Assembly (NCBI RefSeq): GCF_003918875.1
Contig: NW_025766081.1
Location: forward strand, 1,178,001-1,242,000
From: Haliotis rubra
Taxonomy: Eukaryota
DNA length: 64,000 nt
Direction of reading: 5' to 3'
The notes beneath the pieces are model-generated. The model had not been told where the DNA came from. It saw only the letters and a program-made list of their open reading frames with translations, and searched no databases. The stretch's first letter is position 1, and every line of letters starts with the position of its first letter. The translations under genes were made by a program, and so were the position numbers. This document shows, one piece after another, positions 2,621-64,000 of this stretch.

Positions 2621-3279
2621 ACGGATATCACAGGTTACTGACCAGTATCATTCCAACCCGGATCTCCACTGGTCAGTAGGGTCAGTCACTGAGATTAACC
2701 TCGCTTTCAGCAATATTCAAGTTATGTTACACACTTACAGCGAGTCATCGTGATGTGGAATGAGAGCTCGAAGAGATGCAGTACTTAGGCGTTTGATAAC
2801 ACTCTCTTATAACAGCCACAAGGACGGATATCTATGGCACATGAGATGGCCGCGCCAACCTCACTTCCTCTTTGACCTATTCACAGAGTTGTCGAAACCC
2901 TTGAGGATCCTTGTCAATAATGGAGCCGGGGCCAGACAACCCAGTGATGGACATAATGAGCATCGATGTTCGAGTTGGGACCAGTGACTCACATAAACCT
3001 GACCACCCGATCCTTTTGCATCTTATGAGTGAGTCAGTTTATTTTTACGCCGCACTCGACAATATTCCAGCAATTTTGCGGCTGCATCTTATGGTATATA
3101 TGTATTGCTGAAGACCAATTCGATCCGGGACGTGCACTTGCGGACAGAAGACACGAGTGGTCCTGTCGTCAAAGTCGCCGCAATTCGCCACGAAGAGTGA
3201 GTGAGTGAGTTTAGTTTTACACCGCTTTTAGCAATATTCCAGCAATATCACTGCGGCGGTCACCAGAAGAAGAACGCGT

Positions 3280-4422: not shown

Positions 4423-5104
4423 TAGTCAGTCTCGTGGTTGCAAAGCTTACTGTGTACAGGTATAGAAGATTATAACCTGTAACAAACATCCGCAGATGAA
4501 ACAGGACGGATGGATGTAGCCAGGACGGACGAAAGTACTCGACATACGCCATCTATCGGATGACGATAACTGATTATCAATGCTCGCCCAGAGAAGATCC
4601 GGGTTAGAATTGGTCTTCAGCAATCCATGCTGGTCGGGAGGGGATCGGTGGTCAGTCTCACTGACCTGATTGACACATGTCATCGTATGCCATTGCGTAG
4701 ATCGATGCTCATGATGCGATTCTTGAGAGGCATTTAGAAGTTGGTGAATATATAAGTCGAGTATATGGATGGCAGCTTCTTGTTTATTGTATATCAAAAC
4801 GTTTCTGGGCTACTTCTTGCCCCTTCTTCAGGTGATTAAAGACAGATGTAGAAAGCAAACTAGATATACCAGATTTACAGGTAGACAGATATGTACATGT
4901 ATATATATACAATCAATCACAGAGGACCGATCAAAAGCAGTGATAATTGGGATAAGGTAAAGTCAGTTGACACAAATAATGGGGATAAAGAGATGTGGAT
5001 ACAGCAGAGTAATATACAGCTAATTAAGTGACAATTAGATTTACAGGACGCCAGAGATGTACACATACATACATCGCTGGCGTCCACATCCAAGTCCACA
5101 TCCA

Positions 5105-6213: not shown

Positions 6214-7571
6214 ACATTACGAACAAACCATTGGATTCTTCACGGATGTCGAACTGTATGCCGCAAATGAACATTTGCTAAAACACAGACAGTTGTGAGT
6301 GAATGCGTTGGTGTGAGTTTGATTGAGTGATGTTTTACGCCGCACTCATAACAGCTTAAATCATACAAAACAAATTGCTTTTATCTTTTTCACAATTTAA
6401 ATTAGGTTTACCTCGACAATCTAGACAGCACATGCATCGACCTGAACCGACCTGAATGATCTGACACAATATAGCAATTGTCATTTTTGTAAAGCGGACA
6501 CCTAACATAAATTTAAATAATGCGCCACGGCCCAGTTATGTAGACATCTACTGGCAGTGTTCTCATACAAATTTAATGTTTACGTTTTTTTAAAAAATGT
6601 ACGAATTGCGTAATCACTCTGTACCAGGATACAAATGCCGTTGTCGGGTTTCACAAGGGTGTTTTGTTGGTAGAGTGATAAGCCTACTAACTGGAGTCCA
6701 TATTATCATAATCATAAATGACATTAATATGAAATAGAATTTCAATTCTCCATGGCTAATTGATCACAATCACGCTTCACAATCACGTCCCAACATTGCA
6801 TTGGCCGTATGTGAACATTCTACCGAACGATATGTGTTTGTACAGATAACACAAGTGTGGGTATCTATGTTACGCACACTCTGAGGTGGGATTACCGTTA
6901 ACGCCAGCTTGTAAAGCGATGGGTGATCAGACCTGCTCACAAACGTTCGGCGCAAAATATTTGGACAGATGGAAAGTACATAGCCCTTTTAGTTCAAATC
7001 AAAGTTCTTCGAGAGGCAGGGAAATACCCCGTTATAACATCTACAGCGCCTCGTAAACTAAACAACGTTCATCGGAAGATTCGCAAATTAGTCATATATA
7101 TAGGATCATTGTAGTGTTATTTGGTTTGTTGTTAAACGCTAAAATCAGCAATATTCCAGCTATATGGCGGCAGTCTGTAAATAATCGAGTCTGGACCAGA
7201 CAATCCAGTGATCGACAGCATGAGCATCGATCTACGCAATTGGGATACGATGACATGTGTCAACAGACCAACGTAATGTGGCTGGAGTATTGTAGATTGT
7301 GACGTCATCAAACAAACACCAAACACTGTTTTTATCCCCGATCTTATGTGCGCGGATAATTCCAGCTACAAAGCGGTTCTTGGACAGTCAAACTGATGAG
7401 CACCCATCCACGACGGATCTTACAACCTGGTACAATGACTCTATTCCACACAGAATAATGGGGATTGGAAAAACCAATATGCCAAAATGTACTAGAAACA
7501 ACAGTTAGGCACTCTGAAAATAATGCCTAGTTCGCATGGAATCAGTCTATCTCGGAGTCCCCCAGAGTGCC

Positions 7572-7992
7572 ATCCGTGAAGATCCGGGTTAGAATGAGCC
7601 TTTAGTAACCCATGCTTGTTATAGAGGCGGGGCGGTGGGGTAGCCTAGTGGTTAAATCGTTGGCTCGTCACGCCGAAGACCCGGGTTCGATTCCCCACAT
7701 GGGCACAATGTGTTAAGCCCATTTCTGGTGTCCCCCGCCGTGATATTGCTGGAATATTGCTAAAAGCGGCGTAAAACTAAACTCAGTCAGTCAGTGTTAT
7801 AGAGGCGACTAACGGGATCGGGTGGTCAGGCTCGCTGGCTTGGATGACACATATCATCGGTTCCCAATTGCGCAGATCGATGCATATGCTGTTGATCACT
7901 GGATTGTCTGGTCCAGACTCGATTAGTTACAGTCCGCCGCCATATAGCTGGAATATTTCTGAGTGCGGCGGCGTAAAACTAAACTCACTCAC
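7572..7992 (+). mobile_element. Family B short retroposon interrupted by a family A SINE (7630-7794)
   Basis: 13-bp TSD TGTTATAGAGGCG at 7617-7629 and 7795-7807; removing the insert restores the family B consensus. Confidence 0.92.
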
Positions 7993-11355: not shown

Positions 11356-11600
11356 GACGCCGTGCATATCCGGGTTAGAATTGGTCTTCGGCAACTGATG
11401 CTTGTCGTAAGAGGCGACTAACGGGATCGGGTGGTCGGGCTCGCTAGCTTGGTTGATACATGTCATGGTGTCCTACATGCGTAGCTCGATGCTCATGATG
11501 TCAATCACTTGATTGTCTTTTCCAGACTCGATTTTTTACTGACCACCGCCATATATCTGGTATATTGCTGCGTGCGGCGTTAAGCAACAATCAAAACCAT
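11356..11600 (+). mobile_element. Family B short retroposon
   Basis: ATCCGGGTTAGAATTGGTCTTC...TGTCGTAAGAGGCGACTAACGGG head through the GCGGCGTTAA tail. Confidence 0.88.
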
Positions 11601-12084
11601 CAGCTACGGAACAATGATATCCGATGCATTTCCTTATTTTAAATTGTACAGTACTTTCTCGATATTCTGACTAGCCTTTGCATGTATTTATGACAGGTGG
11701 CACCGGTTGTGCAGGATACCAGGTCACCTGGTATTATCAATATTGTTAAAGTGATTCATAAACACATGATCATGATTTGTACAATCGACTGTGTTTCAGT
11801 AAATATTTATTTTTAGATGTGGAAAAGGTTTTTCGCTTTTATTTACACATTTCACAACTGAGCTATTTCTCATCGAAAGTTCATTTTGTCACACCTATAG
11901 CTGTTAACTTGTGACCACTGAGTGTATTTAACCTCCATTTGCGGCTCAGAGCAGCAAATATTTTACCTCCAATGACTTTGATGAATCTATATTTCGTGAT
12001 ATATAATAACTGTTTCGGGTTTCACTGAACAAATATATCTTTCCCATTCCAGACATAATAAAGGTATCATCTTTGAAAATCACC

Positions 12085-13170
12085 ATGGCAACATTCAACG
12101 TCAACCAATCAAATGATTCAGCATCAACGAGGAACCTCTTGTGGGAGGAAAATGAAAACATGGCCAAGACTCTCATTCCTGCCATGGCGTTTGTAGGAGC
12201 CATAATGGTGATCGGATTCTTTGGAAACATTTTAGTATGTTTCATATTCACAAGAAGGATTCCTTTGTCTGTCAACACTTTTCTTCTGGTCTTCCTCGCG
12301 GCTTTGGACCTGGTGAACTGCACATTGGCAATGCCGTTCGAAATAATGGACATGCGCTATCATTACCTTTTTGAAAGTGACATAACATGTAAGATATTTC
12401 GTTTTATTGTAGCATTTCCCAATATCGACTCGGCATTTGTTTTGTTGATCATTACAGTCGACAGATACAAGCGGGTATGTAACCCCATGTCAGATCAAAT
12501 GACATTTAAGGATTCCAGGAGGAATATTACCATAGCAACTGCTGCTGCCATCCTTGTTTCTTTGCCAGCTTTGGTAATATATGGAAAACGAACAGTGAAA
12601 ACAAACACATATGAACTTAGAGGGCACGATTGTACAACGAGTGAAAACATGAAGGGTTCAATTGTCCCCTTTATTTACCAGATATTTGGAGGAAGTGTAA
12701 TGCTAGTCATATCTATGGCGATATGCTATATGTATATCAACGTTTGGAGAGAAATACGGAAACACAAAAAGAACATTTGTAACAACACACAATTTGTTCT
12801 TCGTGAAAATTCAAGGAGAGGAAATATTGTAAGCACCAATTCAGATTTTCAAGATGAAGAAATACCACATGACACAAATCCAAAGCACAAATTAATCAGG
12901 GGAAAACGCATAACCGTCATTGCTTTTACAGTGACATTTGCCTTCATACTGAGTTTCCTCCCTTTTGCAGTGATCATGACGGTGCGCAGTGTTCAAACTT
13001 TGACATTTCATCCTGATGGAGTCTGGTTTGTGACGTACAACATTCTAATTCGGTCGTACTTCATCAGTTCAATGACAAACCCATTAGTGTACGGATTCAT
13101 GAGTCTGAGGTTTAGACAGGAATGTTTTAATGTGGGTTTTTCAAAATGCATTTGTGAAAGACGACAATAA
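12085..13170 (+). CDS. Class A (rhodopsin-like) orphan GPCR, subtype A, copy 1 (361 aa from ATG 12085)
   Basis: Seven hydrophobic segments; GN (TM1), LAALD (TM2), Cys at the top of TM3 and in ECL2, VDRY, SFLP (TM6), NPLVY, FRQEC helix 8; N-glycosylation sequons; Kozak ACCATGG; acceptor TTCCCATTCCAG ending at 12052. Confidence 0.93.
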   Translation: MATFNVNQSNDSASTRNLLWEENENMAKTLIPAMAFVGAIMVIGFFGNILVCFIFTRRIPLSVNTFLLVFLAALDLVNCTLAMPFEIMDMRYHYLFESDITCKIFRFIVAFPNIDSAFVLLIITVDRYKRVCNPMSDQMTFKDSRRNITIATAAAILVSLPALVIYGKRTVKTNTYELRGHDCTTSENMKGSIVPFIYQIFGGSVMLVISMAICYMYINVWREIRKHKKNICNNTQFVLRENSRRGNIVSTNSDFQDEEIPHDTNPKHKLIRGKRITVIAFTVTFAFILSFLPFAVIMTVRSVQTLTFHPDGVWFVTYNILIRSYFISSMTNPLVYGFMSLRFRQECFNVGFSKCICERRQ

Positions 13171-13288: not shown

Positions 13289-13748
13289 CGACCCTGAGAA
13301 GATCGGAGTTCCAATTGGTCTTCAACAACCCATGTTTGTCGTAAGAGGCGACTAACAGGATCGGATGGTCAAGCTTCCGGACTTAGTTGTCACATGTCGT
13401 TGTATCCCAGTTGCGTAGATCCATGCTCATGCTGTTGATCACTGGATGCTACAGACATCGGGGTAGCAGAGCAAAACGATATAAATGTATTACACTTGAC
13501 TGCATTCTAAGATCCAGGTTACGATTGATCTTCAATAACCCATGCTTGTCGTAAGAGGCGACTAACGGGATCGGGTGGTCAGGCTCGCTGATTTGGTTGA
13601 CACATGTCAACGTATCCCAATTGCACAGATCGATGCTCATGCTGTTGATCACTGGATTGTCTTTACTAGACTCGATTATTTACAGACCTCCGCCAAATAG
13701 TTGGAATATTGCTGAGTGCGGCTTTAAACTAAACTCACTCACTCACTC
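13289..13748 (+). mobile_element. Two adjacent family B retroposon copies (13289-13448 partial; 13508-13748)
   Basis: Match to the family consensus; duplicated at 21457-21918 as part of the segmental duplication. Confidence 0.85.
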
Positions 13749-14844: not shown

Positions 14845-14904
14845 CTATACAACAATTTCTTCACAATATACCTGTTACACCTTGATGTGTTTTAGATTCC
14901 AGAC

Positions 14905-16041
14905 ATGTTCAAGGTGTCGCCTATGAAAATCACCATGACAACTTTCAACGTCAACCAATCAAATTATTCCGTGTCAAATGAGAACCTCTTGTGGAAGGAA
15001 AATGAAAACATGGCCAAGACTCTCATCCCCGCCATGGCGTTTGTAGGAGTCATAATGGTGATCGGATTCTTTGGAAACGTTTTAGTATGTTACATATTCA
15101 CAAGAAGGATTCCTTTGTCTGTCAACACTTTTCTTCTGGTTATTCTCGCAGCCTTGGATCTGGTGAATTGTACATTGAACATGCCGTTTGAAATAATAGA
15201 CCTGCGATATTTCTACGTTTTTGAAAGTGATATTGCGTGTAAAATCTTTCGCTTTCTTGTAGCATTTCCCAATATCGACTCGACATTTGTTTTGTTGATC
15301 ATAACAGTCGACAGATACAAACGGGTGTGTAGGCCAATGTCAATTCAAATGACGTTTAAAGATGCTAGGAAGTATGTTGCCATAGCAACTGCTGCTGCAA
15401 TCCTCCTGTCCTTGCCGGCTGTGTTGATATATGGAACAGAAACAGTGAAAACAAGCATGAAGGAACTGTATGGTCAAGACTGTAAATCTACTGACAAAAT
15501 TACGGGCACAGCATTCCGGTTTTTTTACCAGGTAGCTATCGGACTAGGTGCAATGCTTATCTCCGCGGTATTATGTTATATTTATGTCCACATCTGGAGA
15601 GAAATACGGACACATGAAATAAACATTCGGAAGAAAACCCAATTCGTCCTAATGGATACGAGTAATTCAACCAAACATAGCACCACAGGTCCAAGCCCAG
15701 GCCATCAAAGTGAAGATATACCAAACGAGATTAAGGGGAGACCAACCAGCAGAAAACGAATAACCTTCATTGCTTTTACCGTGACATTCGTCTTCATGTT
15801 GAGTTATCTGCCCCTTGCTGTCATCATGGCGGTCCGAAGTGTCCCCGAGCCCAAATGGCCTCTTGATGGACTGCTGAGTAGAATCCTGATCCGGTTCTGT
15901 TACCTTAATTCTATGACAAATCCCTTTGTCTACGGGTTTATGAGCAAGAGGTTCCGACGTGAGTGTTTTAAAGTATTTGTCCCAAAATGTCTTGTCTGTT
16001 ACGATCACACACTAGAGAACACTAGAGCCCATGGTTTCTAA
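14905..16041 (+). CDS. Class A orphan GPCR, subtype B, copy 2 (378 aa; alternative ATGs 14923 and 14935)
   Basis: Intact 7TM ORF with GN, LAALD, VDRY, SYLP and NPFVY; preceded by the acceptor TTTAGATTCCAG. Confidence 0.93.
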   Translation: MFKVSPMKITMTTFNVNQSNYSVSNENLLWKENENMAKTLIPAMAFVGVIMVIGFFGNVLVCYIFTRRIPLSVNTFLLVILAALDLVNCTLNMPFEIIDLRYFYVFESDIACKIFRFLVAFPNIDSTFVLLIITVDRYKRVCRPMSIQMTFKDARKYVAIATAAAILLSLPAVLIYGTETVKTSMKELYGQDCKSTDKITGTAFRFFYQVAIGLGAMLISAVLCYIYVHIWREIRTHEINIRKKTQFVLMDTSNSTKHSTTGPSPGHQSEDIPNEIKGRPTSRKRITFIAFTVTFVFMLSYLPLAVIMAVRSVPEPKWPLDGLLSRILIRFCYLNSMTNPFVYGFMSKRFRRECFKVFVPKCLVCYDHTLENTRAHGF

Positions 16042-18743: not shown

Positions 18744-19035
18744 ATGTTTGTGTTACATGAGTTCATTCGGCCGCTGATTGATCTGCTGTGAAGTCATTCG
18801 AGCAGATGTGATTTCAAGTGACGTCACCATATACCGATCTCGTCTGACGTCACTGGTATTCGGCCACTTCATGTTCAGTTCAAATCCTGCTGTAATTATT
18901 TGAGAACGAACAACGTTAATCAAATGATTCGGTCTCAAACTTTCTGTCAATGCTTTTTGAAATCCTACAAAAATGATATTCTAAACACGATAGGCCTATG
19001 GGGGACCATGTCGTGTGGTTCCCCTCTATGCAGGT

Positions 19036-19284
19036 ACCCGTGAAGGTCCGGGTTAGAATCGGTCTTCAGCAACGTGCTTGTCGTAAGAGGCGACTAACGG
19101 GATAGGGTTGTCAGGGTCGCCGACTCAATTTAAAACATGTCATCGTATCCCAATTGCATAGATCGATGCTCATACTGTTGATCACTGGGTTGTCTGGTTC
19201 AGGTTCGATTGTTTACATACCTCTACCACGCAGGTGGAATATTACTGAGTACGGCGTTAAACAACAAACTAGCCAACCAACAAA
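19036..19284 (+). mobile_element. Family B short retroposon, full length (deleted paralogue at 26950-27157)
   Basis: Starts ACCCGTGAAGGTCCGGGTTAG; degenerate TSD CTCTATGCAGGT / CTCAATGCATGGT. Confidence 0.9.
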
Positions 19285-20269
19285 CTCAATGCATGGTTTA
19301 ACTGCAGTGTCTGCTGAGATCAGATTCTAAAGTACAATGGTGTGACGACAGGATAAATATATCCTTCTCTTGCCAATCCTGACTTTCTCTGAGAAATTCA
19401 GTAGTTGGTGATGCATGCATTCAGTCTAAGATAAACGCAAATAAATTGACATCGACTCTTGAGAAAAACATCGTGAATATTTTAGGAACGTCCGGATGGT
19501 TAGATCTTTAAATTTGAATATCCGACATCATGTCTATTGTCACCAGGATGAAACCGGAACCTGCCCATTCTGTTAATATGTTGAACACTGACGCTTTCAC
19601 ATAAGTAGCAGTTGGCATAGATTTACAAGCGACATTTTGAAGTATTCTCCATCGACGTACGTGGACAACTAAAGGAACACACAAACGAATACATAAGTAA
19701 GTCTGTCATAATGAATATTTACATTTACATTATGTGCAGGATGAGCAGACATATTAAATGTCCGAAATCTATGGCAATGACAACATAGCTTATACCATTT
19801 TTATAGCTCTATGTGCGTGCTTGTGTTGTCGTCTATTGCCGGTTATATTGTGGAAACCGATTAAGATACCCTGCTCCTGATGGTCGCGTACCGATCCGTC
19901 GAATTTATGATTTCAGAGTAGTAAAATGCATTCGACGGATGAGCACTGTGATCTTAGCTATTAAATAGTTATCAAAACATTGGATCATACCACAAAAAAG
20001 ACGCCACAAGGGATGTTGGATGGTTTGACTTTATTTTTGTACTTTTGTACTTATCTTTGCCTACTCATACGATACAATGAGAAATTGATGCATTAAATAT
20101 ATGTTTTGACTCTATATTTTTGCAATTGATGCATTAAATAAAATGCATTCATACGAAGAAATATATACAAGGATATTATATCTATATCTGCATTCAATAA
20201 AACGAAACATTATTTCCTTGACACATTTTCAGTTTGTAGGAATGTTACACACAATCACCATACTCCGAA

Positions 20270-21340: not shown

Positions 21341-22696
21341 ATATATTCCAGAACATATTTGCATTTCGTAATCCAGTGTTGTTGATGAAAGTTATGAGTT
21401 TATAAACCAGCAAATGAAAAATATTAAAATATTCTGCAAAGACGTTAATTAGTTATCGACCCTGAGAAGATCGGAGTTCCAATTGGTCTTCAACAACCCA
21501 TGTTTGTCGTAAGAGGCGACTAACAGGATCGGATGGTCAAGCTTCCGGACTTAGTTGTCACATGTCGTTGTATCCCAGTTGCGTAGATCGATGCTCATGC
21601 TGTTGATCACTGGATGGTACAGACATTGGGGTAGCAGGGCACCACGATATAAATGTATTACACTTGACTGCATTCTAAGATCCAGGTTACGATTGATCTT
21701 CAATAACCCATGCTTGTCGTAAGAGGTGACTAACGGATCCGGAGGCCAGGCTCGCTGATTTGGTTGACACATGTCATCGTACCCCAATTGCACAGATCGA
21801 TACTCATGCTGTTGATCACTGGATTGTCTTTACTAGACTCGATTATTTACAGACCGCCGCCAAATAGTTGGAATATTGCTGAGTGCGGCCTTAAACTAAA
21901 CTCACTCACTCACTCACTCGAGCCCTTTCAACTTCGTGTAGAATTTGTGTTACCCTTACAAAGAAATCACACCAGACAACAAACTGTGTCGTGAGGATGT
22001 AAAATGGCTCCCTTAAAAGTAAGTATGGCAGGGACTAACTTTCCAGGGTCCAGGGACCCGATCCATAAAACGTTAATGTTCGTAGCACTACGGAATTCCT
22101 AAGCCTGTGCTAAAGTGTAGAGTTACGATGAGTCGTAAGGATCGGGGCCTAGGACTGTGGATCGGGGCCTAGGACTGTGGATTGGGGTCTAGGACTGTGG
22201 ATCGGAGCCTGGGACTTGATAAGCATACGTTACATACTTGTTCTGTTACATGTATTTTATTTTGTATATTGTCGTAAGTGAGCAGGTTTGGCTTAATGAG
22301 TTGTGAACAGCATTTCGGTCTTATGGAGGCACGTTAACTTGGATGGAGCCCAGATAGATGGAGGAATTCTCTCTAACAAACCATGATCCCGGCGAATCTT
22401 GGTTCGAACCAACGATCCAGGTTTCTGGTACACCTCAGGGTTCTGTTGAGTAGTACTATACTACTGGGTCGGTGGGGTAGCCTTGTGGTTAAGGCGTTCA
22501 ATCGTCACACCGAAGACCCGGGTTCGATTCCCCGCTTGGGTAAAATGTGTCAAGCCCATTTCTGGTGTTCCCTGTCGTGACATTGCTGGAATATTGCTTA
22601 AAAGCGGCGTAAGACTAAACTCACTCACTCACTCCTATACAACTATATTTCTTCACAATATACCTGTTACACCTTGATGTGTTTTAGATTCCAGAC

Positions 22697-23832
22697 ATGT
22701 TCAAGGTGTCGCCTATGAAAATCACCATGGCAACATTCAACGTCAACCAATCAAATTATTCCGTGTCAAATGAGAACCTCTTGTGGAAGGAAAATGAAAA
22801 CATGGCCAAGACTCTCATCCCCGCCATGGCGTTTGTAGGAGTCATAATGGTGATCGGATTCTTTGGAAACTTTTTAGTATGCTACATATTCACAAGAAGG
22901 ATTCCTTTGTCTGTCAACACTTTTCTTCTGGTTATTCTCGCAGCCTTGGATCTGGTGAATTGTACATTGAACATGCCGTTTGAAATAATAGACCTGCGAT
23001 ATTTCTACGTTTTTGAAAGTGATATTGCGTGTAAAATTTTTCGCTTTCTTGTAGCATTTCCCAATATCGACTCGACATTTGTTTTGTTGATCATAACAGT
23101 CGACAGATACAAACGGGTGTGTAGGCCAATGTCAATTCAAATGACGTTTAAAGATGCTAGGAAGTATGTTGCCATAGCAACTGCTGCTGCAATCCTCCTG
23201 TCCTTGCCGGCTGTGTTGATATATGGAACAGAAACAGTGAAAACAAGCATGAAGGAACTGTATGGTCAAGACTGTAAATCTACTGACAAAATTACGGGCA
23301 CAGCATTCCGGTTTTTTTACCAGGTAGCTATCGGACTAGGTGCAATGCTTATCTCCGCGGTATTATGTTATATTTATGTCCACATCTGGAGAGAAATACG
23401 GACACATGAAATAAACATTCGGAAGAAAACCCAATTCGTCCTAATGGATACGAGTAATTCAACCAAACATAGCACCACAGGTCCAAGCCCAGGCCATCAA
23501 AGTGAAGATATACCAAACGAGATTAAGGGGAGACCAACCAGCAGAAAACGAATAACCTTCATTGCTTTTACCGTGACATCCGTCTTCATGTTGAGTTATC
23601 TTCCCCTTGCTGTCATCATAGCAGTCGAAGTGTCCCCGAGCCCAAATGGCCTCTTGATGGACTGCTGAGTAGAATCCTGATCCGGTTCTATTACCTTAAT
23701 TCTATGACAAACCCCTTTGTCTACGGGTTTATGAGCAAGAGGTTCCGACGTGAGTGTTTTAAAGTATTTGTTCCAAAATGTCTCGTCTGTTACGATCCTA
23801 CACTAGAAAATACTAGAGCACGTGGTTTCTAA
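22697..23832 (+). pseudogene. GPCR subtype B, copy 4, frameshifted after TM6 (ORF 22697-23668 lacks TM7)
   Basis: Near-identical to copy 2; ATAGCAGTCGAAGT versus ATGGCGGTCCGAAGT shows a 1-bp loss near 23625; the NPFVY segment persists out of frame to the TAA at 23830-23832. Confidence 0.8.
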
Positions 23833-24713: not shown

Positions 24714-27700
24714 GACCACAAGAGGAAATGAAAGTAACAAGTGCAAGACACTGATAGTAGCAGGATGTCAGATTAGATTTTATTTATACCTTCCTTCTTA
24801 AGTCACAACCCTGACTGTGAAGTGTAGCAAGTTGGCGAGTAGCTAATCGCAGAATTAGGCTTACCACTGAAAGTATTCGGTATGCACAATTTGCACGTGT
24901 GCGTGTTTGTGGCATGTGTGCGTGTTTGTGGAACCTTACTGTGCTTCCGTGCGTGCGTGCGTGCGTGCGTGCGTGCGTTCGTGTCTGTCTGTACGAACCC
25001 ACGGAGATTCCGGTGCTACAGTTGATCAATCGCTGTCATTTATCGAGCACAACAAAACCCAGTTGTAAGAATGTGCATAAATAAAAGTCAGGCTTCGTCT
25101 GCTTGGAAACAAATCTAAACAAAAGAATATGTTAAAGTACTGTTCTCCTGCTCATAACAGAGTATCAAGTGAAAACATTGATTACACAATAGTTTCGTTT
25201 CCTGCTGACTGGGTTCCGTCCTATTACGCAACTTAGTACAATAGCCAGTCCAGAAGTTTGAAACCAGCTCATTCAACTGGATATATAAATATTAATCAGT
25301 ACTATTTGATACATCTAATCACTTGTATATTGCCACACAACGATCCTTCTAATCCTTGCAATCACATCGTGCAGCGTGCTCTGTCGTACAGCATGATCTG
25401 AGAAACGGAAATTTGGAAATCGTGAAAATCTCAAAACGAGGGTCGGCCGGGAGAAACGTTTGGCGGTCTGGTACGGATTTGATGTATATGAATCACACTG
25501 TACGTTACAAAAATACACTGAATAAGCGCAAAGAACACATAACAGGTGTAACCAGTGAGCCAGATGAATTGTGAATCAGTGTACGACCATTTTAAACATG
25601 CTGCCTAAACCTCGACATAAAATATAGAAATACGATTTTTTAAAACTTTAAAATTAATTTGTAAATACCATTTTCTTATGAAACAAGGAATTGGAATTCA
25701 GTGTAACCATAGTTGTTTGTAGTGTCTCTTTTCATTTTCACACGAAAAAAATCGGATCGGCTGAAAAGTAGGTCATTGAGACCATAGGTTGTATCATATG
25801 TCCCAAGGTGTTTTTCGTTTAATTTTCAGGTGAATAATATTGACTAGCTTTTGCATGTGTTTGTGACGCATGTCATCTGAAAGGCTACTCTTCCCTGATA
25901 AGATCGCTCATCTTGTATGATAGCTGGCTATTTGATACAGATTCGAAACACATGCTTACAATATAGTCGTAATCTCCTATAAATATGAAATGTTTTTTGT
26001 CGCTTTTTTTGCGCACTTATTATGTGGGGAATCAAACACCTACTATTATTTCTATGCTAATATTTGTATAGCACCAATATCCTGCTCAGCTGCTCAAAGG
26101 CGCTTTGTTTTTCCCACGATGATTGGATGTCAATCGCAACTCCCTTGGGATCACACAACTCTTGCACCCACTAGGCGTTAAAGTGACTTTCCCTTTCTTA
26201 CGAGGTACCCATTCACAGCTGGGTGGGCAAGTAGTCACAGTACTTTGTCCAAGTTTACTACACGTTGCAGTACCCGCAACTAGGTGTTTGCACGTATTCA
26301 TGTAGCCACCATCTGGTCATTTACCAACGGATTCGTGGGTTCTATTAAGCCCGCTGGATCACTAGTCCGGCGCCTTAGACAGCTCGCCCACGGCTCCCCC
26401 ACTCGGTTTTATGTAAATATCTTAGATAATTTATTGTTATTATCATCATCAATAATAAAGGATTTGAAGCTGACATTTCGTTGTTTGTGTTATAGTGAGT
26501 GAGTGAGTAAGTTTAGTTTTACGCCCCTTATAGCAATATTCCAGCAATATCATGGCGGGGGGCACCAGAAATGGGCTTCACACATTGTGCCCGGGTGTTC
26601 GGCGTGACGTGCGAACGCTTTAACCACGGTGCTACCCCACCGCCAATGTTTGTGTTACACTTGTAATAATGAACATGTGTTCATTCGGCCGCTGATTGAT
26701 CTGCTGTGAAGTCATTCGAGCAGATGTGATTTCAAGTGACGTCACCATATACCGATCTCGTCTGACGTCACTGGTATTCGGCCACTTCATGTTCAGTTCA
26801 AATCCTGCTGTTATTATTTGAGAACGAACAACGTTAATCAAATGATTCGGTCTCAAACTTTCTGTCAATGCTTTTGAAATCCTACAAAAAAAAGATATTC
26901 TAAACACGATATGGGTGACTATGTCGTGTGGTTCCCTATCTATGCAGGTACCCGTGAAGATCCGGGTTAGAGGCGACTAACTGTCAGGCTCGCCGACTCA
27001 ATTAAAAACATGTCATCGTATCCCAATTGCATAGATCGATGCTCATACTGTTGATCACTGGATTGTCTGGTTCAGGTTCGATTACTTACAGATCTCTACA
27101 ATGTAGGTGGAATATTGCTGAGTGCGGCGTTAAACAACAAACTAGCCAACCAACAAACTCAATGCATGGTTTAACTGCAGTGTCTGCTGAGATCAGATTC
27201 TAAAGTACAATGGCGTGACGACAGGATAAACATATCCTTCTCTTGCCAATCCTGACATCGACTCTTGAGAAAAACATCCTGAACATTTTAGGAACGTTCG
27301 GATGGTTAGATCTTTACATTTGAATATCCGAGATTATATCTATTGTCAACAGGATGAAACTGGAACCTGCCGATTCCGTTAATATGTTGAACACTGACGC
27401 TTTCACATACGTAGCAGTTGGCATAGATTTGCAAGCGACATTTTGAAGTATTCTCCATCGACGTGGACAACTAAAGGAACACACAAACGAATACATAAGT
27501 AAGTCTGTCATAGTGGATAGTTACATTTACATTATGTGCAGGATGAGCAGACATATTAAATGTCCGAAATCTATGGTAATGACAACATAGCTTATACCAC
27601 TTTCATAGCTCTGTGTGCGTGCTTGTGTTGTCGTCTATTGCCGGTTATATTGTGGAAACCGATTAAGATACCCTGCTCCTGATGGTCGCGTACCGATCCG

Positions 27701-28554: not shown

Positions 28555-28755
28555 TTGGTTAGTTGGTTTGTTGTTTAACGCCCCACTCAGCAATATTCCT
28601 GGTAAGTATATTGCGGCGGTCTGTAAATAATCGGGATACGATGACATGTGTTAACCAAGTCTGCGAGTCTGCCCCACCTGATCCCATAAGTGGCCTTTTA
28701 AGACAAGCATGGGATACTGATGATCAATGATTGTAACCCGGATCTTCACGGGTCT
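28555..28755 (-). mobile_element. Family B retroposon, degenerate (paralogue at 42209-42445)
   Basis: AACCCGGATCTTCACGGGTC is the reverse complement of the head. Confidence 0.8.
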
Positions 28756-28877
28756 ACTCTTGAGATATATTTTACATTTCGCAAACATGTCATAGGGATA
28801 TATATATTTAGCATGATATAGCTGGAATACTGTGATGTTAAATTTTAACTCCCTATCTTTGTCACGTACAGCACAAC

Positions 28878-42208: not shown

Positions 42209-42445
42209 TGGTTGGTTTGTTTGTTGTTTAACGCTCCACTCCGCAATATCCCAGCTATATGGCGGCGGTCTGTAAATAATCGAAGCCGGACCAGACAATC
42301 CAGTGATCAAAAGCATGAGCATCGATCTACACAATTGGGATACGATGACATGTGTCAACCAAGTCAGCGAGTCTGACCACCCGATCCCATTAGTCGACAA
42401 GTATGGGCTACTGAAGATCAGTTGTAACCCGGATCTTCACGGGTC
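42209..42445 (-). mobile_element. Family B retroposon, near full length
   Basis: Reverse complement GACCCGTGAAGATCCGGGTTAC...; TSD core CTCTTGAG at 42201 and 42448. Confidence 0.88.
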
Positions 42446-42648
42446 TACTCTTGAGATACATTTTACATTGTGCCAACATGTCATATGGAACTCTGGGCGG
42501 TTTCCAGTAATTTTAAAAGGGTTTCAAAACAGTAAATGTACATGAGTTTCTCGTTCTAATGTTCGCCATTATATAGCCGGTTTACTAACAATGTGACGTT
42601 ATATTTTAACTCTCTTTCTTCTTACCATGTCAGGCACAGTACCACGAC

Positions 42649-55600: not shown

Positions 55601-58600
55601 TGGGGACAGCATAGTGGTTAACATCAGCATGTAGTGACCTGTCTATTTTGTCTTCTCTCACATGGGGAGGTGGGGACAGCCTAGTGGTTAACATCAGCAT
55701 GTAGTGACCTGTCTATTTTGTCTTCTCTCACTTGGGGAGGTGGGGACAGCATAGTGGTTAACATCAGCATGTAGTGACCTGTCTATTTTGTCTTCTCTCA
55801 CATGGGCAGGTGGGGACAGCCTAGTGGTTAACATCAGCATGTAGTGACCTGTCTATTTTGTCTTCTCTCACATGGGGAGGTGGGGACAGCCTAGTGGTTA
55901 ACAGTGTGCGAAATGTTCGCTGATCCTGTGGTCCCTGGCTAGTAAAAATTGATCAAGACCACTTAATGATAAGTTTGCACTGTTGGCCAGTTAATTTTGT
56001 ATTGGTAGTTAAGTAAATCAACAATTGTTATTTGGGACCAGTGAAGTACAGACAGGACCACTAATTATTTTCCATTCACTGATCATATGGTCTAGTGGGA
56101 AATTAAGAAAGATTTGTTTTCCTGGGTTATAGCATTCGCTCGTCACGCCGAAGGCCCAGGTATGATTCCCCGCATGGGTACAATGTGTGAAGCCGATTTC
56201 TGAGGTCCTACGTCGTGATGTTGCTGGAATATTGCTAAAGACGGCATATACCTTACTCCCTCACTCTTCTCTCAGTTGAAAACGTTTCTAAACAGCTGTT
56301 GTCATTGATTTTATAATAAATACATGGGCGATCTCGTGCCAAAATACATAAGCTGCATTTGCGAGATTGACAGGTTATGTTAGCTCTTTTCATGAGCAAT
56401 CAATACGAACGATAGCAATCCATGTCTTCTGCATTACGCACATGATTTTTAGAAATATATTCCGTACCCATATGTTTAAACCTTTTGTGTATCAAGCATT
56501 TTTCAGTGTGTAATTGATACGCTACAATGATTTTTCAATGTGTACTTGGACATTTTCGATGGATATTTTACCCGGATACGCAGCTTATCTGGGCCTCTGA
56601 ACACTGTCAAAGCAACCTGTGAAGGTCTGGGTTAGAATTGATCTTCAGTAAGTCATGCTTGTCATAAGAGGCAACTAACGGGATCGGGTGGTCAGGCTCG
56701 CTGACTTGGTTGCCACATGTCATTGTATCCCACTAGCGTAGATCAATACTCATGGTGTTGATCACTGGATTTTCTGGTCCAGACTCGATTATTTACAGAC
56801 CGGCACCATATAGTTGGAATATCACTGAGTGTGGTGTAAAGCTAAACTCACTGAATCACTCGTTTGACTAGTCCAGGGTTGATTATGTACAGGATGCCAT
56901 CCTCAATCTAAATACAGCTTGAAATTAATCTACGAGTGTTACGTTTGCAAGAAGGTTGTTTTGAGGGAATCAGTATACCTTTTATGACATGAGTTTCATG
57001 TTTCTTTCAGCAATGAAGAAGAGGATAGTTGGTGCCAAGATTGCCTGTCTTGACTTCAGTCTTCAGAAAACTAAGATGCATCTAGGTGTACAGGTCCTTG
57101 TAGAAGATCCTTCCAAACTAGATGGTATCCGACAAAGGTGAGAGTGCAGTCTCACCCATCACTGTGATCATATAATTACAAATAACAAAAGATTTCATAA
57201 TGTATCTGTCACTTACGAGGGATGTTTTACTCCTATATATCTGCAGACATGAAGTAATTACTTACTTACTTAGGCCTGACACCCCTCGTGGGGCATAGGC
57301 CGTCCACTACAGATATCCAGATCCCCCTGTCTTGGACTTTCCTCTCCTTGTGGTTCCAAGTGAATACACTGTTCTTTATATCATCATCGAGGTTGCATTG
57401 CCAGGTGTTTTGGGCCTGCCTTTCCTTTTCTCCCAGGGGCGACGGGGTAGCCTAGTGGTTAGAGCGTTTCCTTGTCACGCCAAAGACCTGGGTTCGATTC
57501 CCCAAATGTGTACAATGTGTGAAGCCCATTTCTGGTGTCCCTCGCCGTGATATTGCTGGAATATTGCTAAAAGCGGCGTAAAACTAAACTCACTCACTCT
57601 TTTCCCCTATTTGTCCCCTGAGGATAAAGTAATTGTCGTCAATGTTTACCATGTTTACATTTTTAAAGGAAAAGGAAACCTTTTTGTGTGTTGCACTGAA
57701 ATACGTTTCTGCATTTGGAGCTAGTGTGCTTCTGCTTACTGAATTAAACATTTCAAGAAACACGATAAATGTTCCCGGTGTTACCATTTACAGTGTTCAG
57801 AACATTACAGAGCTAATTGTTTACCTGTTATTAAATGTAATATATTCTTTTTTGTGTTGTGTTGGTTTAAGAAGTTTGATTAAACTGATAGTTTATGTAG
57901 AATATTAGGATTACACCATCAGACAAAGAATGTACAGTTATGTGCAGTGTGCATAGTAGTTTCCCTGAAAGTTATTAGCCCACAAAATAATTCACTAGCC
58001 TGAAATTTTAATGTAGAAACTAACCAAACGATTACGAAAATAGATGAGAATAAGATATTGTCGGCATGATCGGATTTCCTCATTAAGCTGCTTAATATGA
58101 TGAAGATTTTTATCAGGCCATAATTTTGGATGATTTAAAAGTGTATTATAAATTAACAAGTCGGAGAAAGTGGTATATTTACAAAATGACCCCATGAAGA
58201 TTCACTAGCCAGTCAGGCCAGTGACTGTGGAGATTTACTGGCCCGACTGGATTTTTACTAGCCAAAGGCTAGCGAGCAGTCGCTTTTTCGCACAGTGGTT
58301 GTGTGTACATTCATTGCTGATAATCACTGTATATTTTTTCTTCCCTTGTGAACAGAGAATCTGACATCACCAAGGAGAAGATCCAAAAGATCATCAGCGC
58401 TGGTGCCAATGTAATTCTGACAACAGGTGGCATTGATGACTTGTGTCTGAAGTACTTCGTAGAGGCTGGCGCCATGGCGGTCAGGCGGTGTAAGAAGGCT
58501 GACCTCAAGAGGATAGCCAGAGCTACTGGAGGTGGGTCAAGGGGGGGGTTACTGTTAATATATGGCCATGTCACCGTCAGTGGGCTTTCTTGTGGGTTCT

Positions 58601-61600
58601 CTACAAAGGTTATTATCCCCTCTGTGAAGTGGCATACATATAGGACCTGGGGCGGTGGTGTAGCCAAGTGTTATAGCGATCGCTCGTCATGCCGAAGACC
58701 CAGGTTCGATTCCCTACATGGGTACTATGTGTGAAGTCCATTTCTGGTGTCCCCCGTTCTGATATTGCTGGAATATTGCTAAAAGTGGCGTAAAACCATA
58801 CTTTCTCTTCACACATATAGAAATTGTTGCTTTCAGTCTATCAAGTTCTTTTTCTGAAGCATTACTCAAAGATTGTTCAGGATTTCTTGATCAAACTTCG
58901 CACATACATTCTTCTGGTCATTAGGCTTTAGGGATATAGTCAACTTTTCTTGGCAATAAACTTGACATAGCTCATATACCTTTAATATTTCTTGTTTAAA
59001 CATCGCCAAGATTTAATTGTAAGGAAACTTTTGTTTCTTCATCTTATCAGTTTTCCATGAGTATATTTATTTCATACAAACACTGAAAAGCCAATGTATG
59101 ATACCCACTTCTACATGAAACACTTCTTGTTTCAGTCTTAGTAAAATCAGATCTATTCTAGATCTAAATAAGATTATAGCCAAATCAGGTAACTTCATTT
59201 GGACGTAAGGGGAACTTTGACCCACAATCAATGTGAAAGATACATGCTGATGCTGGCTTTCTAAAACAATTTGGCTGAAAGTCCTTTACAGCCAGTGATA
59301 GGGAAAGTCGAGCTCTGCCAAGTCACCCCACAATACAAATGTACTAGGTTACATTCATTCATCATTGGCTGATTGACACACCACTTCAAGCCACCTCCGT
59401 ACATAGTGGTACTGTAGTCTCAGTAATGAATAATGTACATTGTAGCCACATTCCTGATGACACTGGCCAACCTGGACGGAGAGGAGTCGTTCGAGACGTC
59501 TATGCTGGGACAAGCTGAGGAGGTGGTCACAGAGAGAATCTGTGATGATGAGCTTATTGTCATCAAAGGGTGAGCTTCTATACTTCCCATAGTGTGATCT
59601 TTGTCCCAGTTACTGTTACAATGGTAACCAGTAAAGTTACAATAACATGGAGGATGACTTATTATTGATTTACTGAGCAGATGATGAAGATAGTAATGTG
59701 CTAGAATCATTCTCCACTCCCTGTCTGGTTGTATCATGGTTTTTCAGCACCATACCCATACTGTTTCAAAGCGACCCATGAAGATCCGGTTTAGAACTGA
59801 TCTTCAGTAACCTATTTTTGTCGTAAAAGGCGACCAATGTGATCGGGTGGTCAGGCTTACTGACTTGGTTGACACATGTCATCGCATCCGAATTGCGTAG
59901 ATCAATGCTCATACTGTTGATCACTGGAATCTCTGGTCCAGACTCAATTATTTACCGACTGCCGCCATATAGCTGGAATGTTGCTGAGTGTGGCCTACAC
60001 CTAAACTCTCTCACTGTTTCAAAGGCTTAAAGGCTTTTCACCTGCATCACATGAGGATTTCATCACACATCAAAGTAACACAAACTGAAAATTCTAAATC
60101 CTACTCAGAAATAAATATAACTCAACTACTTATCCTGTCTTCACTGTTGGAAGCCGCATGTAACATGCTGGCCTTAAAAAAAGTATTGTAAAAAGGTAAA
60201 ACAATAACTGTTTTGCTTGAAGGACTAAGGCTCGAACTGCCGCGTCAATCATCCTACGAGGAGCCAACGACTTCATGTGTGATGAGATGGAGCGATCTGT
60301 TCATGATGCCCTGTGTGTGGTCCGGCGAGTGTTGGAATCCAAGACCGTCGTTGTTGGAGGTGGTGCTGTTGAAGCAGCTCTGTCCATATATTTGGAGAAT
60401 TTTGCAACATCCCTGGTAAATATGATTCTTTATCCATGTGTTAGGGCTCGGGTGGTACAACCTGCTATGATACAGTATGTGCCACATTTGGGAGGCTATG
60501 TCATAAATGTCATGTTACAGAAATAACAACACTAGCTAAACTCCTTATTAAGAGCTGGGTTGCAAGTGGTCTTCGGCAAGCTGCCAACCCATGTTTGTAA
60601 GAGGCAACATAGAGGATTGGGTCGTCACACTCACTATGACTTTTTACTGCTACCCCACCACCCCTTTTCTGATAGCAAAATAGAGTAAACCCATGTATCG
60701 ATTTCAAGTGTCTGACTGCTGTAAAACAGGACCTATCTCTATCACTGCATCATCTGACCCTGGCTGCAGGGAACAACAATGGATGTGGTGATGCATGGTA
60801 TGGAAAAATTGGTCACACAGCATATATAGGTTGTGCTATGAAAATGGTTCTTGACAATTGTTTTGGATTGAAGATTGTTAGTATATAGTCTTTGGCACCT
60901 GTTTACACTGATTTAGTTCTATGTGTCCAAATGCTGATGATTGGATGTTCATTGTATGTTTTTTGGATGAAAGACTGCCTATAAGTGGTCTTTGGATCCT
61001 ACATACACTGATTTAATGTGTTCAAATACTTATGATCACTGGGGTGGTAGGGTAGCGTAGTGGTTAAAGCGTTCGCTCATCATGCCGAAGACCCGGGTTC
61101 GATTCCCCACATGGTTACAATGTGTGAAGCCCATTTCTGGTGTCCCCGCCGTGGTATTGTTGGAATATTGCTAAAAGCGGCGCGTAAAAGTCACTCACTC
61201 ACTCACTCACTCATGATCACTGCCTGTTTTCCAGTCATCAAGAGAGCAGCTGGCTATAGCTGAGTTTGCCAAATCCCTACTCGTCATCCCGAAACAGTTG
61301 TCAGTGAATGCAGCCCAAGACTCTACTGATCTGGTGGCCAAATTAAGGGCATACCACAACACCTCCCAGACCAAGGCAGAACACAGCGATCTCAAGTGGT
61401 GAGTGGAAGTTTTATTGGCTATCATAGTCAGATACTGTTGTTTTAAACTTTGTGTTGAACATACTGTTGTTTAAATTTTGTGTCGAACATATACTGTGTC
61501 TCGAAGTAAATTCTTCAACCCTTTATTCATTGTTTTGTCAGTTGCATCGAACCTAGGATAACTCAAACAATGTACTTTGTTCCTTTCAACCTTGACACAA

Positions 61601-63780: not shown

Positions 63781-64000
63781 AGACCTGTGAAGATCCAGGT
63801 TAGAATTGGTCTTCACCAACCCATGCTTGTCGTAAAAGGCGACTAACGGGATCAGGTGTTCAGGCTCGCTGACTTAGTCAACATATATCATCGTATCCCA
63901 ATTGCATACATCGAGGGGCAGTGGGGTAGCCTAATGGTTTAAGTGCTGTTGATCACCGGAATTTACATGGGTACAACTGAAGCCCATTTTTACAGTCCCC
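63781..64000 (+). mobile_element. Family B retroposon interrupted near 63914 by a degenerate family A SINE (runs off the window)
   Basis: GACCTGTGAAGATCCAGGTTAG head, then GGGGCAGTGGGGTAGCCTAATGG. Confidence 0.8.

What the first reader, a model, noticed from the sequence alone, without database searches (positions are those of the whole stretch)
19036..19101. SINE-like family B has no Pol III head and starts with a pseudoknotted 4-way-junction RNA: candidate new self-cleaving ribozyme
Seen: about a dozen heads (4587, 7572, 11356, 13289, 13508, 19036, 21457, 28755 minus, 42445 minus, 56614, 59772, 63781) give the consensus GA-CCCGT-GAAGATC-C-GGGTT-AGAATT-GRTCTTC-AGC-AACCC-AT-GCT-T-GTCG-TAAGAGG-CGAC-TA-ACGGG. 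It folds as P1 CCCGT/ACGGG closing three hairpins (GAAGATC/GRTCTTC, AGC/GCT, GTCG/CGAC), with a loop-loop pseudoknot GGGTT/AACCC. The AGC/GCT helix appears as AAC/GTT at 13289 and as AGT/ACT in the 42445 copy, both double compensatory changes. No single copy here is perfect; the fold is from the consensus. TSD-bounded copies (59772, 19036, 42445) start within 1-3 nt of the base of P1. I see no A/B box and no tRNA, 5S or 7SL similarity. Established: non-LTR elements such as R2 and RTE use 5' HDV-like ribozymes, and Penelope elements and retrozymes use hammerheads, to cut themselves out of read-through transcripts. Inference: this head may do the same job, but its strand order does not fit HDV, hammerhead, twister, pistol or hairpin topologies, so it may be an undescribed ribozyme class driving a promoterless SINE.
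Basis: partly seen in the sequence, partly recalled or inferred. Interest (0 to 1): 0.88.

Follow-up and report, generated by a model that had tools for sequence, protein, structure and literature searches.

The report
Known LINE-headed abalone SINE (LP-SINE)
This is a copy of a very abundant abalone short jumping gene whose tRNA-free, roughly 70-base folded head was already described in 2016 as borrowed from the start of a LINE; nothing I could run shows that the head cuts itself.

Summary
Family B is a real ~235-bp SINE: about 65 copies in 264 kb of unselected genome, which scales to roughly 10^5 copies. It has a sharp 5' end at the A of ACCCGTG, target-site duplications and a 3' tail shared with a tRNA-SINE. 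No tRNA, 5S, 7SL or ribozyme model matches the head.

Compensatory changes among copies are no commoner than in shuffles. The HDV-like, twister, hammerhead, hatchet and pistol tests fail. No 5'-end RNA data could be obtained.

The element fits the "LP-SINE" that Matetovici et al. 2016 (PMC4758252) described in Haliotis. Its ~70-bp head is homologous to the first ~68 bp of Nimb and RTE LINE 5' UTRs and was proposed to be a Pol II promoter. I could not align my head to those LINEs here, so this identity is a strong inference and was not tested.

The same head was flagged in several other windows of this genome earlier in the scan. Other agents there called it a known LP-SINE, and they reported a LINE carrying an HDV-like ribozyme followed by this module.

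What the head does remains unknown. The fold and a cleavage or promoter assay are still worth testing.

The parts
19028..19032 (+). 5' copy of a short target-site duplication (ATGCA) of the focal copy
   Evidence: Read from the sequence. The same ATGCA lies at 19289-19293. It is weak because it is short.
19035..19035 (+). Variable nucleotide just before the templated 5' end (T in this copy)
   Evidence: Across 46 full copies position -1 is G 23, T 11, A 10, C 2, with 0.24 bit of information against 1.26 bit at the next base.
19036..19101 (+). Head module (66 nt here; this copy has lost 2 nt in the loop of hairpin 2). P1 is 19037-19041 with 19097-19101. Hairpin 1 is 19042-19048 with 19061-19067. 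Hairpin 2 is 19068-19070 with 19076-19078. Hairpin 3 is 19080-19083 with 19091-19094. The proposed loop-loop pairing starts at GGGTT, 19050-19054.
   Evidence: Covariance model R1 scores 92.8 bits here. The consensus minimum-energy fold equals this four-way junction. No Rfam match.
19102..19225 (+). Body of the SINE (family-specific, origin unknown)
   Evidence: The nhmmer model of family B covers positions 2-229 in this copy.
19226..19288 (+). 3' tail: a ~45-nt block shared with the tRNA-derived SINE family A, then AAC/CAAAC-type simple repeats
   Evidence: 30 hits in all held abalone DNA (about 21 of them in the unselected 264 kb) match only model positions ~187-229. Nearly all of the 30 lie behind a family A tRNA-like head.
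19289..19293 (+). 3' copy of the short target-site duplication
   Evidence: Read from the sequence.
11357..11590 (+). Full-length family B copy
   Evidence: 87.7 bits.
42209..42445 (-). Full-length family B copy with an 8-nt duplication (CTCAAGAG). 28555-28754 (-) is its segmental duplicate.
56614..56830 (+). Full-length family B copy
59773..59989 (+). Full-length family B copy with a 12-nt duplication. It lies in sense orientation in an intron of an expressed, spliced gene.
   Evidence: Exons come from RNA contigs and the gene strand from GT splice starts.
13291..13729 (+). Two adjacent partial copies (13291-13445 and 13501-13729), duplicated at 21459-21896
26949..27193 (+). Segmental duplicate of the focal copy (flanks included) with an internal deletion in the head
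   Evidence: the match covers query 1-320, flanks included. Also.
7571..7970 (+). Family B copy split by an inserted family A tRNA-SINE (head 7571-7630, remainder 7801-7970)
63782..63914 (+). Family B copy (model 2-157) interrupted by a family A insertion
4586..4712 (+). Partial family B copy with internal deletions
60542..60626 (+). Old, diverged head fragment, sense-oriented in an intron of the same gene
   Evidence: (31.6 bits).

Best explanation
Family B is the abalone LP-SINE, a non-autonomous retroposon moved by a LINE's enzymes. Its tRNA head has been replaced by the first ~68-70 nt of a LINE 5' UTR.

The head supplies what a tRNA head supplies in ordinary SINEs: a way for each new copy to produce an RNA that starts at the element's own first base. 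Most likely it acts as an internal, LINE-type RNA polymerase II start region, giving a capped RNA that begins at the A of ACCCGTG. The four-way-junction fold would then be a leader structure of that RNA and not a catalyst. The shared 3' tail is what the LINE reverse transcriptase recognises.

Shown: the family, its exact 5' end, the duplications, the shared tail, and the absence of Pol III or ribozyme matches.
Inferred: identity with the published Hdi/Hmi_LP family, the LINE origin of the head, and the promoter function.
For: - SINE anatomy and abundance.
- A sharp step in conservation at A1.
- Tail shared with the tRNA-SINE family A.
- No tRNA, 5S, 7SL or snRNA match.
- PMC4758252 describes duplication-flanked Haliotis elements with a ~70-bp head homologous to the first ~68 bp of Nimb-17_LMi, I-3_DR and RTE-9_CPB. 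In Saccostrea this head replaces a tRNA head on the same body and tail. An ACTAAA hexamer precedes the tandem repeats, and I see that hexamer in the ACTC-repeat tail variant.
- G is enriched at position -1 (23 of 46 copies; 48% of 60 copies; the genome's G fraction is not measured here). This fits reverse transcription of a cap. That reading rests on my own knowledge of L1 5' junctions.
- Sense-oriented copies sit in introns of an expressed, correctly spliced gene, so the head is not a strongly disruptive cis element, at least in old copies.
Against: - I could not align the head to any LINE.
- No Inr/DPE-like motif is evident at the right spacing (by eye).
- The G at -1 could instead be a templated first base that is often lost.
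- Unchecked notes from this scan say that a LINE in this genome carries an HDV-like ribozyme upstream of a similar module. In that LINE, then, the module does not itself set the RNA start.
- Promoter activity has never been tested, as PMC4758252 itself says.
Confidence: 0.45

Rival explanations
1. The head is a self-cleaving ribozyme of an undescribed class. It cuts just 5' of the A of ACCCGTG and frees the SINE RNA from read-through transcripts.
For: - The module sits at the exact 5' end.
- It folds into a compact four-way junction with a possible loop-loop pairing.
- 5'-terminal ribozymes are established in LINEs: HDV-like ribozymes in R2, RTE and L1Tc, and twister variants at the 5' end of Perere-3 with duplications abutting the cut (PMC8501958; PMC5786205).
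- The helix order equals that of a twister with P3 and P5 (my reading).
- The module is reported at the 5' ends of unrelated LINE clades in several phyla.
Against: - No Rfam ribozyme family matches at E <= 10 on intact copies.
- There is no hammerhead core.
- The twister invariants are absent: the GC/GC pseudoknot, the L4 sequence and the GAGGG. The published homology ends near nt 68-70, before the GGG that a twister T1 pairing would need.
- An HDV mapping lacks P3/L3 or P2 and the catalytic C.
- Covariation is not above chance, and stability is ordinary (z -1.0 to -1.4).
- G enrichment at -1 is not expected for a 5'-OH cleavage product.
Confidence: 0.09
2. The head is a non-catalytic structured leader RNA. 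It could be a knot that stalls 5'-3' exonuclease and so trims read-through transcripts to within 0-3 nt of P1, or a binding site for LINE proteins. Transcription would then come from host genes.
For: - There are 0-3 extra nucleotides between the duplication and A1. These are often nested strings (G, AG, TAG; G, CG), as expected from variable trimming of a few source loci.
- The fold closes on the 5' end.
- SINE B sequence is present in RNA contigs as part of longer transcripts.
- Unchecked scan notes place the module behind, not in place of, the LINE's ribozyme.
Against: - There is no similarity to known exonuclease-resistant RNAs. The only Rfam hit is a non-significant match on the opposite strand.
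- Extra nucleotides at 5' junctions are also typical of ordinary LINE-mediated integration.
- A SINE with on the order of 10^5 copies that depends wholly on read-through transcription is less parsimonious than one with its own promoter.
Confidence: 0.2
3. The head is an inactive remnant of an HDV-like ribozyme of the partner LINE. Hairpin 1 would correspond to P1 and GGGTT/AACCC to P2, with the P3/L3 catalytic core missing. It would be kept only as the element's historical 5' end.
For: - A 7-bp hairpin 1 whose loop pairs with the segment just 3' of it is the P1/P2 nesting of HDV-like ribozymes (my mapping on the consensus).
- An unchecked note from this scan reads an abalone SINE head in the same way (s1-339689).
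- HDV-like ribozymes are said to head Nimb/I-type LINEs in this genome.
Against: - In this mapping the cut site would lie 7 nt inside the element, not at its end.
- P1 (2-6 with 64-68) and hairpins 2 and 3 have no HDV counterpart.
- I could not compare the head with the LINE ribozyme.
- A functionless remnant does not explain how new copies get a precise 5' end.
Confidence: 0.12
4. The head is a strongly diverged tRNA-derived Pol III head, so family B is an ordinary SINE2.
For: - Head nt 7-24 match the T-arm/B-box stretch of family A at 16 of 18 positions (1 of 5000 shuffles).
- The four-way junction is a cloverleaf topology.
- The consensus has no TTTT run.
Against: - There is no A box. The B-like box lies at +15, too close to the start, and carries A in place of the invariant C56.
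- The tRNA covariance model and ARAGORN find nothing.
- The same module heads 3-6 kb LINEs that Pol III could not transcribe.
Confidence: 0.05

Closest known systems
LP-SINEs of molluscs (Hdi_LP / Hmi_LP of Haliotis, Lsa_2 of Littorina, Sgl_LP, Oco/Oed_LP; Matetovici et al. 2016, PMC4758252)
   Same: - Same genus.
- SINE size, variable duplications and 3' tandem repeats preceded by ACTAAA.
- No small-RNA head, and a ~70-nt non-tRNA 5' module.
- Tail shared with tRNA-derived SINEs.
   Different: Nothing was found that differs. However, the published sequences are in figures that I could not read, so sequence identity was not checked. The paper did not analyse the fold of the head.
Pr77 / L1TcRz of trypanosomatid L1Tc, ingi and NARTc
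   Same: A ~77-nt module at the extreme 5' end, shared by autonomous LINEs and their short non-autonomous derivatives. [quoted passage not shown]
   Different: Pr77 has been shown to be both an internal promoter and an HDV-like ribozyme. Here neither activity is shown, and the HDV fold does not fit.
Twister variants at the 5' end of Perere-3 (RTE clade) LINEs of Schistosoma mansoni (PMC8501958)
   Same: - A closing helix followed by three hairpins, in the same order as twister P2, P3, P4 and P5.
- A middle hairpin loop containing CCCA.
- UAA before the 3' strand of the closing helix.
- The element starts with an A next to the duplication.
   Different: - The twister invariants are missing (the L2 GC, the L4 GUCCCAAGC, the GAGGG).
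- The Rfam twister models do not match.
- The module appears to end before the segment that a T1 pseudoknot would need.
HDV-like ribozymes at 5' ends of R2, RTE, Baggins and L1Tc elements
   Same: Position at the 5' end of a retroposon, and a nested hairpin/pseudoknot (hairpin 1 with GGGTT/AACCC).
   Different: - There is no P3/L3, P1.1, catalytic C or P2 in the required order.
- The cut site implied by that mapping is 7 nt inside the element.
- No Rfam HDV-type model matches.
Bipartite non-autonomous LINEs and SINEU/5S-headed SINEs (Kojima 2015, 2018; PMC5786205)
   Same: Short retroposons whose 5' part is taken from something other than a tRNA, including LINE 5' UTRs.
   Different: In most such SINEs the LINE 5' piece lies behind a small-RNA head. 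Here it is the head itself.

Membership tests
LP-SINE (Matetovici et al. 2016) | Short (<600 bp) non-coding retroposon with variable target-site duplications and 3' tandem repeats | tested here: met
   The model is ~229 positions long. Fifteen copies have duplications of 8-14 nt. Tails are CAAAC-type or ACTC-type repeats.
LP-SINE (Matetovici et al. 2016) | Head not derived from tRNA, 5S or 7SL RNA | tested here: met
   Rfam at gathering threshold and at E <= 10 gives no such match on the head. ARAGORN finds no tRNA in the window.
LP-SINE (Matetovici et al. 2016) | First ~70 bp homologous to the first ~68 bp of a LINE 5' UTR (Nimb-17_LMi, I-3_DR, RTE-9_CPB) | not testable with these tools
   Repbase sequences and the paper's figures are not available. 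This genome's letters were exhausted. No head-bearing LINE turned up in 361 kb of held abalone DNA, nor in loci fetched through LINE proteins.
LP-SINE (Matetovici et al. 2016) | Body and/or tail shared with tRNA-derived SINEs of the same genome | tested here: met
   Model positions ~187-229 recur behind family A tRNA-like heads.
HDV-like ribozyme | Nested double pseudoknot in the order P1-P2-P3-L3-P3'-P1'-P1.1-P4-J4/2(C)-P2', cut directly 5' of P1 | tested here: not met
   In hand mapping on the consensus, either P2 and the catalytic C are missing, or P3/L3 are missing and the cut site falls 7 nt inside. No Rfam HDV, CPEB3 or drz model matches at E <= 10.
Twister ribozyme | Conserved L1/L2/L4 nucleotides and pseudoknots T1 and T2 | tested here: not met
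   The helix order is compatible. The invariants listed in PMC8501958 Table 1 are absent from the consensus, and no Rfam twister model matches.
Hammerhead ribozyme | CUGANGA ... GAAA core around a three-way junction | tested here: not met
   The core pattern is absent from a locus carrying an intact copy. No Rfam match.
tRNA-derived SINE (SINE2) | A box near +8 to +20 and B box 30-60 nt downstream within a tRNA-like cloverleaf | tested here: not met
   There is only a B-box-like GGTTAGAAT at about +15 (16 of 18 to the family A T arm). There is no A box, and neither the tRNA model nor ARAGORN matches.
Structured RNA under selection (any class) | Base pairs kept by compensatory change more often than chance | tested here: inconclusive
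   Within the family, 7 double-changed cells against 3.3 +/- 1.7 (15 of 500 shuffles reach it), and 91.8% paired against 91.4%. Copies decay neutrally, so this test has little power. Hints at subfamily level (A-U to G-C in hairpin 1 of three copies; P1 as TCTAT/ATAGA in one old copy) are anecdotal, because the old copy has no relatives.

The most novel reading that the evidence does not exclude
The ~68-nt LP module is an RNA device that sets the 5' end of a retroposon RNA on its own. It could be a self-cleaving ribozyme of a new class with a twister-like helix order but different core nucleotides. Alternatively it could be a knot that stops 5'-3' exonucleases. Either would explain why unrelated LINE clades and SINEs in several phyla carry it at their first base.
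Probability: 0.12. Interest if true: 0.85.

Novelty: already known. Interest (0 to 1): 0.3.

Why it matters
LP-SINEs are the one reported case of SINEs headed by LINE sequence instead of a small Pol III RNA. The function of that head has been open since 2016. Here the family makes up several per cent of a 1.38-Gb genome, by rough scaling from 264 kb, so whatever the head does works very well.

The useful output of this check is practical:
- It shows that the predicted fold is a self-contained four-way junction.
- It lists the cheap experiments (cleavage, cap status, promoter reporter, XRN1 resistance) that would decide between promoter, ribozyme and protective knot.

As it stands this is an ordinary copy of a known element.

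Tried and rejected
1. **B's 3' half as a LINE 3' UTR.** I tested whether it is the 3' UTR of the L2-like LINE in L036. It is not. Forty other genomic copies of that LINE match only as far as its (ATT)n end (query 1-251 of 376), so the B piece behind it is a separate truncated insertion.
2. **The old head in L033 (P1 as TCTAT/ATAGA) as a subfamily.** It has no relatives in the genome, so it is a single copy.
3. **Cross-species or viral copies of the head.** Two pattern scans of viral contigs gave 85 loci and no model hit. One metagenome scan gave only abalone-like family B copies on PEAW01 contigs.
4. **A LINE carrying the head.**
   - There is none in the 361 kb of held abalone DNA.
   - The LINE fragment in L043 has no head.
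   - Relatives found through two protein searches and a representative search were at most ~49% identical.
   - Five fetched loci, including 43 kb of Littorina saxatilis, had no hit.
5. **RNA 5' ends.** The only runs offered were contigs. They show exons and that SINE sequence is present in RNA, but not starts.
6. **The weak motif hit at window 2649-2667 (-).** It is a decayed family B head fragment next to a LINE zf-RVT remnant, not a different family.
7. **Inr/DPE motifs at promoter spacing.** None is convincing (by eye).

Full report
**What is there.**
- The 19-nt motif at the start of the finding occurs 11 times in the window, against 0.00 expected.
- A blastn of the focal copy against the window and a multiple alignment show a ~235-bp repeat.
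- The genome is a 1.38-Gb assembly; notes from this scan call it an abalone. A first look there found more than 8000 candidates.
- I fetched 200 kb from places chosen without regard to the repeat and built an nhmmer model from 14 full copies. The model finds 87 hits in 264 kb of unselected DNA.
  - About 21 of these hits are only the last ~45 model positions. That block also ends the tRNA-derived SINE family A.
  - The remaining ~65 are family B, which scales to the order of 10^5 copies.
- About 30 of the 65 start at model positions 2-5.
- Over 60 full copies, information content is at most 0.24 bit at every position from -31 to -1, and 1.26 bit at the A of ACCCGTG. The templated 5' end is therefore that A.
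- Position -1 is G in about half of the copies.
- Fifteen of 46 full copies have exact target-site duplications of 8-14 nt. They carry 0-3 extra nucleotides between the duplication and the A.

**The head.**
- Rfam gives nothing at gathering thresholds in the window. On the head it gives nothing relevant at E <= 10, whether on the focal copy, on six loci with intact copies or on a 161-nt stretch scanned alone. In the same searches the neighbouring family A heads do match the tRNA model.
- ARAGORN calls no tRNA in the window.
- There is no hammerhead core.
There is no A box. The B-like box is too close to the start and has A at the invariant C56. I treat this as a possible trace of ancestry, not as a working Pol III promoter.

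**The fold.**
The energy is -21.0 kcal/mol. Pair probabilities are 0.95 for P1, 0.9 for hairpin 3, 0.7 for hairpin 1 and 0.5-0.6 for hairpin 2. The stability is ordinary, with z = -1.4.
- With 10 more nucleotides, the 5' strand prefers a different partner, and z = -1.0.
- RNAalifold on 45 genomic copies recovers only a 4-bp hairpin.
There are 7 double-changed cells against 3.3 +/- 1.7, which 15 of 500 shuffles reach.
- This test has little power, because dispersed copies are not under selection.
- At the level of source genes there are hints:
  - The two commonest polymorphisms in the head are both wobble-to-Watson-Crick changes.
  - Three copies carry G-C where the rest have A-U in hairpin 1, with G-U intermediates in seven.
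  - One old copy has P1 as TCTAT/ATAGA, but it has no relatives in the genome.
- These hints are anecdotal.

**What it is.**
- A literature search led to Matetovici et al. 2016 (PMC4758252). They describe 'LP-SINEs', duplication-flanked short retroposons of Littorina, Haliotis diversicolor, H. midae, Ostrea and Saccostrea.
- The first ~70 bp of these elements are homologous to the first ~68 bp of the 5' UTRs of LINEs from different clades and phyla: Nimb-17_LMi of locust, I-3_DR of zebrafish and RTE-9_CPB of turtle.
- In Saccostrea this head replaces a tRNA head on the same body and tail.
- The Haliotis elements have ACTAAA in front of their terminal repeats. One tail variant here does too.
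- The authors propose that the head is a LINE promoter. They note the parallel with Pr77, which is both promoter and ribozyme, and they state that no experiment has been done.
- I found no later paper that tests this.
- Family B fits every feature I could test. The defining homology to LINE 5' UTRs could not be tested, because the sequences are only in figures and Repbase is not available. I put identity with Hdi/Hmi_LP at about 0.85.

**Ribozyme tests.**
- *HDV-like.* If P1 is the 5'-terminal helix, then hairpin 3 and the following GTCAG/CTGAC hairpin fall where P3 and P4 should be. But there is then no P2, no P1.1 and no catalytic C. If hairpin 1 is P1 and GGGTT/AACCC is P2, then P3/L3 are missing and the cut would lie 7 nt inside the element.
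- *Twister.* The paper on twister variants at the 5' end of Perere-3 LINEs (PMC8501958) made me compare helix orders.
  - A closing helix followed by three hairpins is the order of twister P2, P3, P4 and P5.
- The middle loop contains CCCA, and UAA precedes the 3' strand.
  - However, the invariant nucleotides and the T2 pairing are absent, and the Rfam twister models do not match.
  - The published homology also ends before the GGG that a T1 pairing would need.
- Membership of every known class fails. A new class is neither supported nor excluded.

**RNA evidence.**
- Only contig-level runs were offered.
- Three small runs are evidently transcriptomes. A 1.9-kb contig lies on the window as six exons between 57009 and 62000, with GT intron starts on the + strand.
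- The family B copies at 59773 and 60542 are sense-oriented in introns of this expressed gene.
- SINE B sequence is present in the RNA contigs. Contigs cannot show starts, so neither a transcription start nor a cut can be seen.

**Search for the LINE.**
- None of the ~95 model hits in the 361 kb of held abalone DNA is followed by anything but the family B body or unrelated sequence.
- An L2-like LINE in L036 is directly followed by the 3' half of family B. Forty other copies of that LINE end at its (ATT)n, so the two are merely adjacent.
- Protein-based routes to LINEs in other assemblies gave only distant relatives and no head.
- Pattern scans of viral and metagenome contigs gave only chance matches and abalone-like family B copies.

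**Earlier notes of this scan (unchecked leads).**
- The same kind of head was flagged in several other windows of this genome.
- One follow-up calls it a known LP-SINE and says the partner LINE and compensating changes are visible elsewhere in the genome (s1-344844).
- Others report a Nimb/I-type LINE that begins with a 59-nt P4-less HDV-like ribozyme followed by a ~70-nt folded module that also heads a SINE (s1-344836 and others).
- One reads a SINE head as a ribozyme with its core deleted (s1-339689).
- I could not test these notes. If the tandem arrangement is right, the module does not set the RNA start in that LINE. This weakens both the simple promoter reading and the ribozyme reading, and keeps a leader-RNA role open.

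**Verdict.**
- My weights are:
  - about 0.45 for a LINE-derived head that provides a Pol II-type start, with the fold as a leader structure;
  - 0.2 for a non-catalytic 5'-end-defining or protein-binding RNA;
  - 0.12 for an inactive ribozyme remnant;
  - 0.09 for a new self-cleaving ribozyme;
  - 0.05 for a degenerate tRNA head.

Noticed in passing
window 7631-7800, 57400-57600, 61000-61200 and many loci (e.g. L009:1300-1480): Family A is a tRNA-derived SINE. The Rfam tRNA model scores 33 bits in L009, yet ARAGORN does not call it. It ends in the same ~45-nt tail as family B and often inserts into or next to family B copies. In the RNA contigs its summed depth relative to a DNA run is about three times that of family B.
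   Followed up: partly
consensus head nt 7-24, e.g. window 19042-19059, against L009:1352-1369: There are 16 of 18 identities between the family B head and the variable-loop/T-arm (B-box) stretch of family A (1 of 5000 shuffles). This may be a trace of a tRNA-derived origin of the LINE leader module, or of exchange between the two SINE families.
   Followed up: partly
window 12010-13167, 14896-16038, 22688-23665, 28842-29984, 42610-43713 (+): A tandem cluster of intronless ~380-aa ORFs. The one tested (12010-13167) matches Pfam 7tm_1, rhodopsin-type GPCR, at E = 6e-29. The segmental duplications that made the cluster also copied family B elements with their flanks (13291/21459, 13501/21669, 19035/26949, 28754/42445).
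   Followed up: partly
window 57009-62000 (+): A spliced, expressed gene. One 1.9-kb transcript contig in three runs covers exons 57009-57135, 58354-58529, 59444-59568, 60222-60414, 61234-61397 and 61917-62000. The product was not identified.
   Followed up: no
window 2178-2615 (-): The 3' end of a 5'-truncated LINE ORF2 (Pfam zf-RVT). A decayed family B head fragment (about 2630-2680) and an older SINE tail lie just upstream.
   Followed up: partly
L036:4510-6213 (-): An L2/CR1-like LINE (RVT_1, E = 2e-25) ending in (ATT)n. It has at least 40 copies of 87-96% identity at its 3' end in the genome. A 5'-truncated family B copy abuts its tail.
   Followed up: yes
L044:6417-9998 (-): A 1194-aa open frame with an organellar/viral type B DNA polymerase domain (DNA_pol_B_2, E = 8e-44). 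It is probably a Polinton/Maverick-type element.
   Followed up: no
L144, L154, L163, L164 (contigs PEAW01...): A public metagenome assembly holds several contigs that carry family B copies (up to 94.6 bits with the head model). It evidently contains abalone or closely related gastropod DNA.
   Followed up: no
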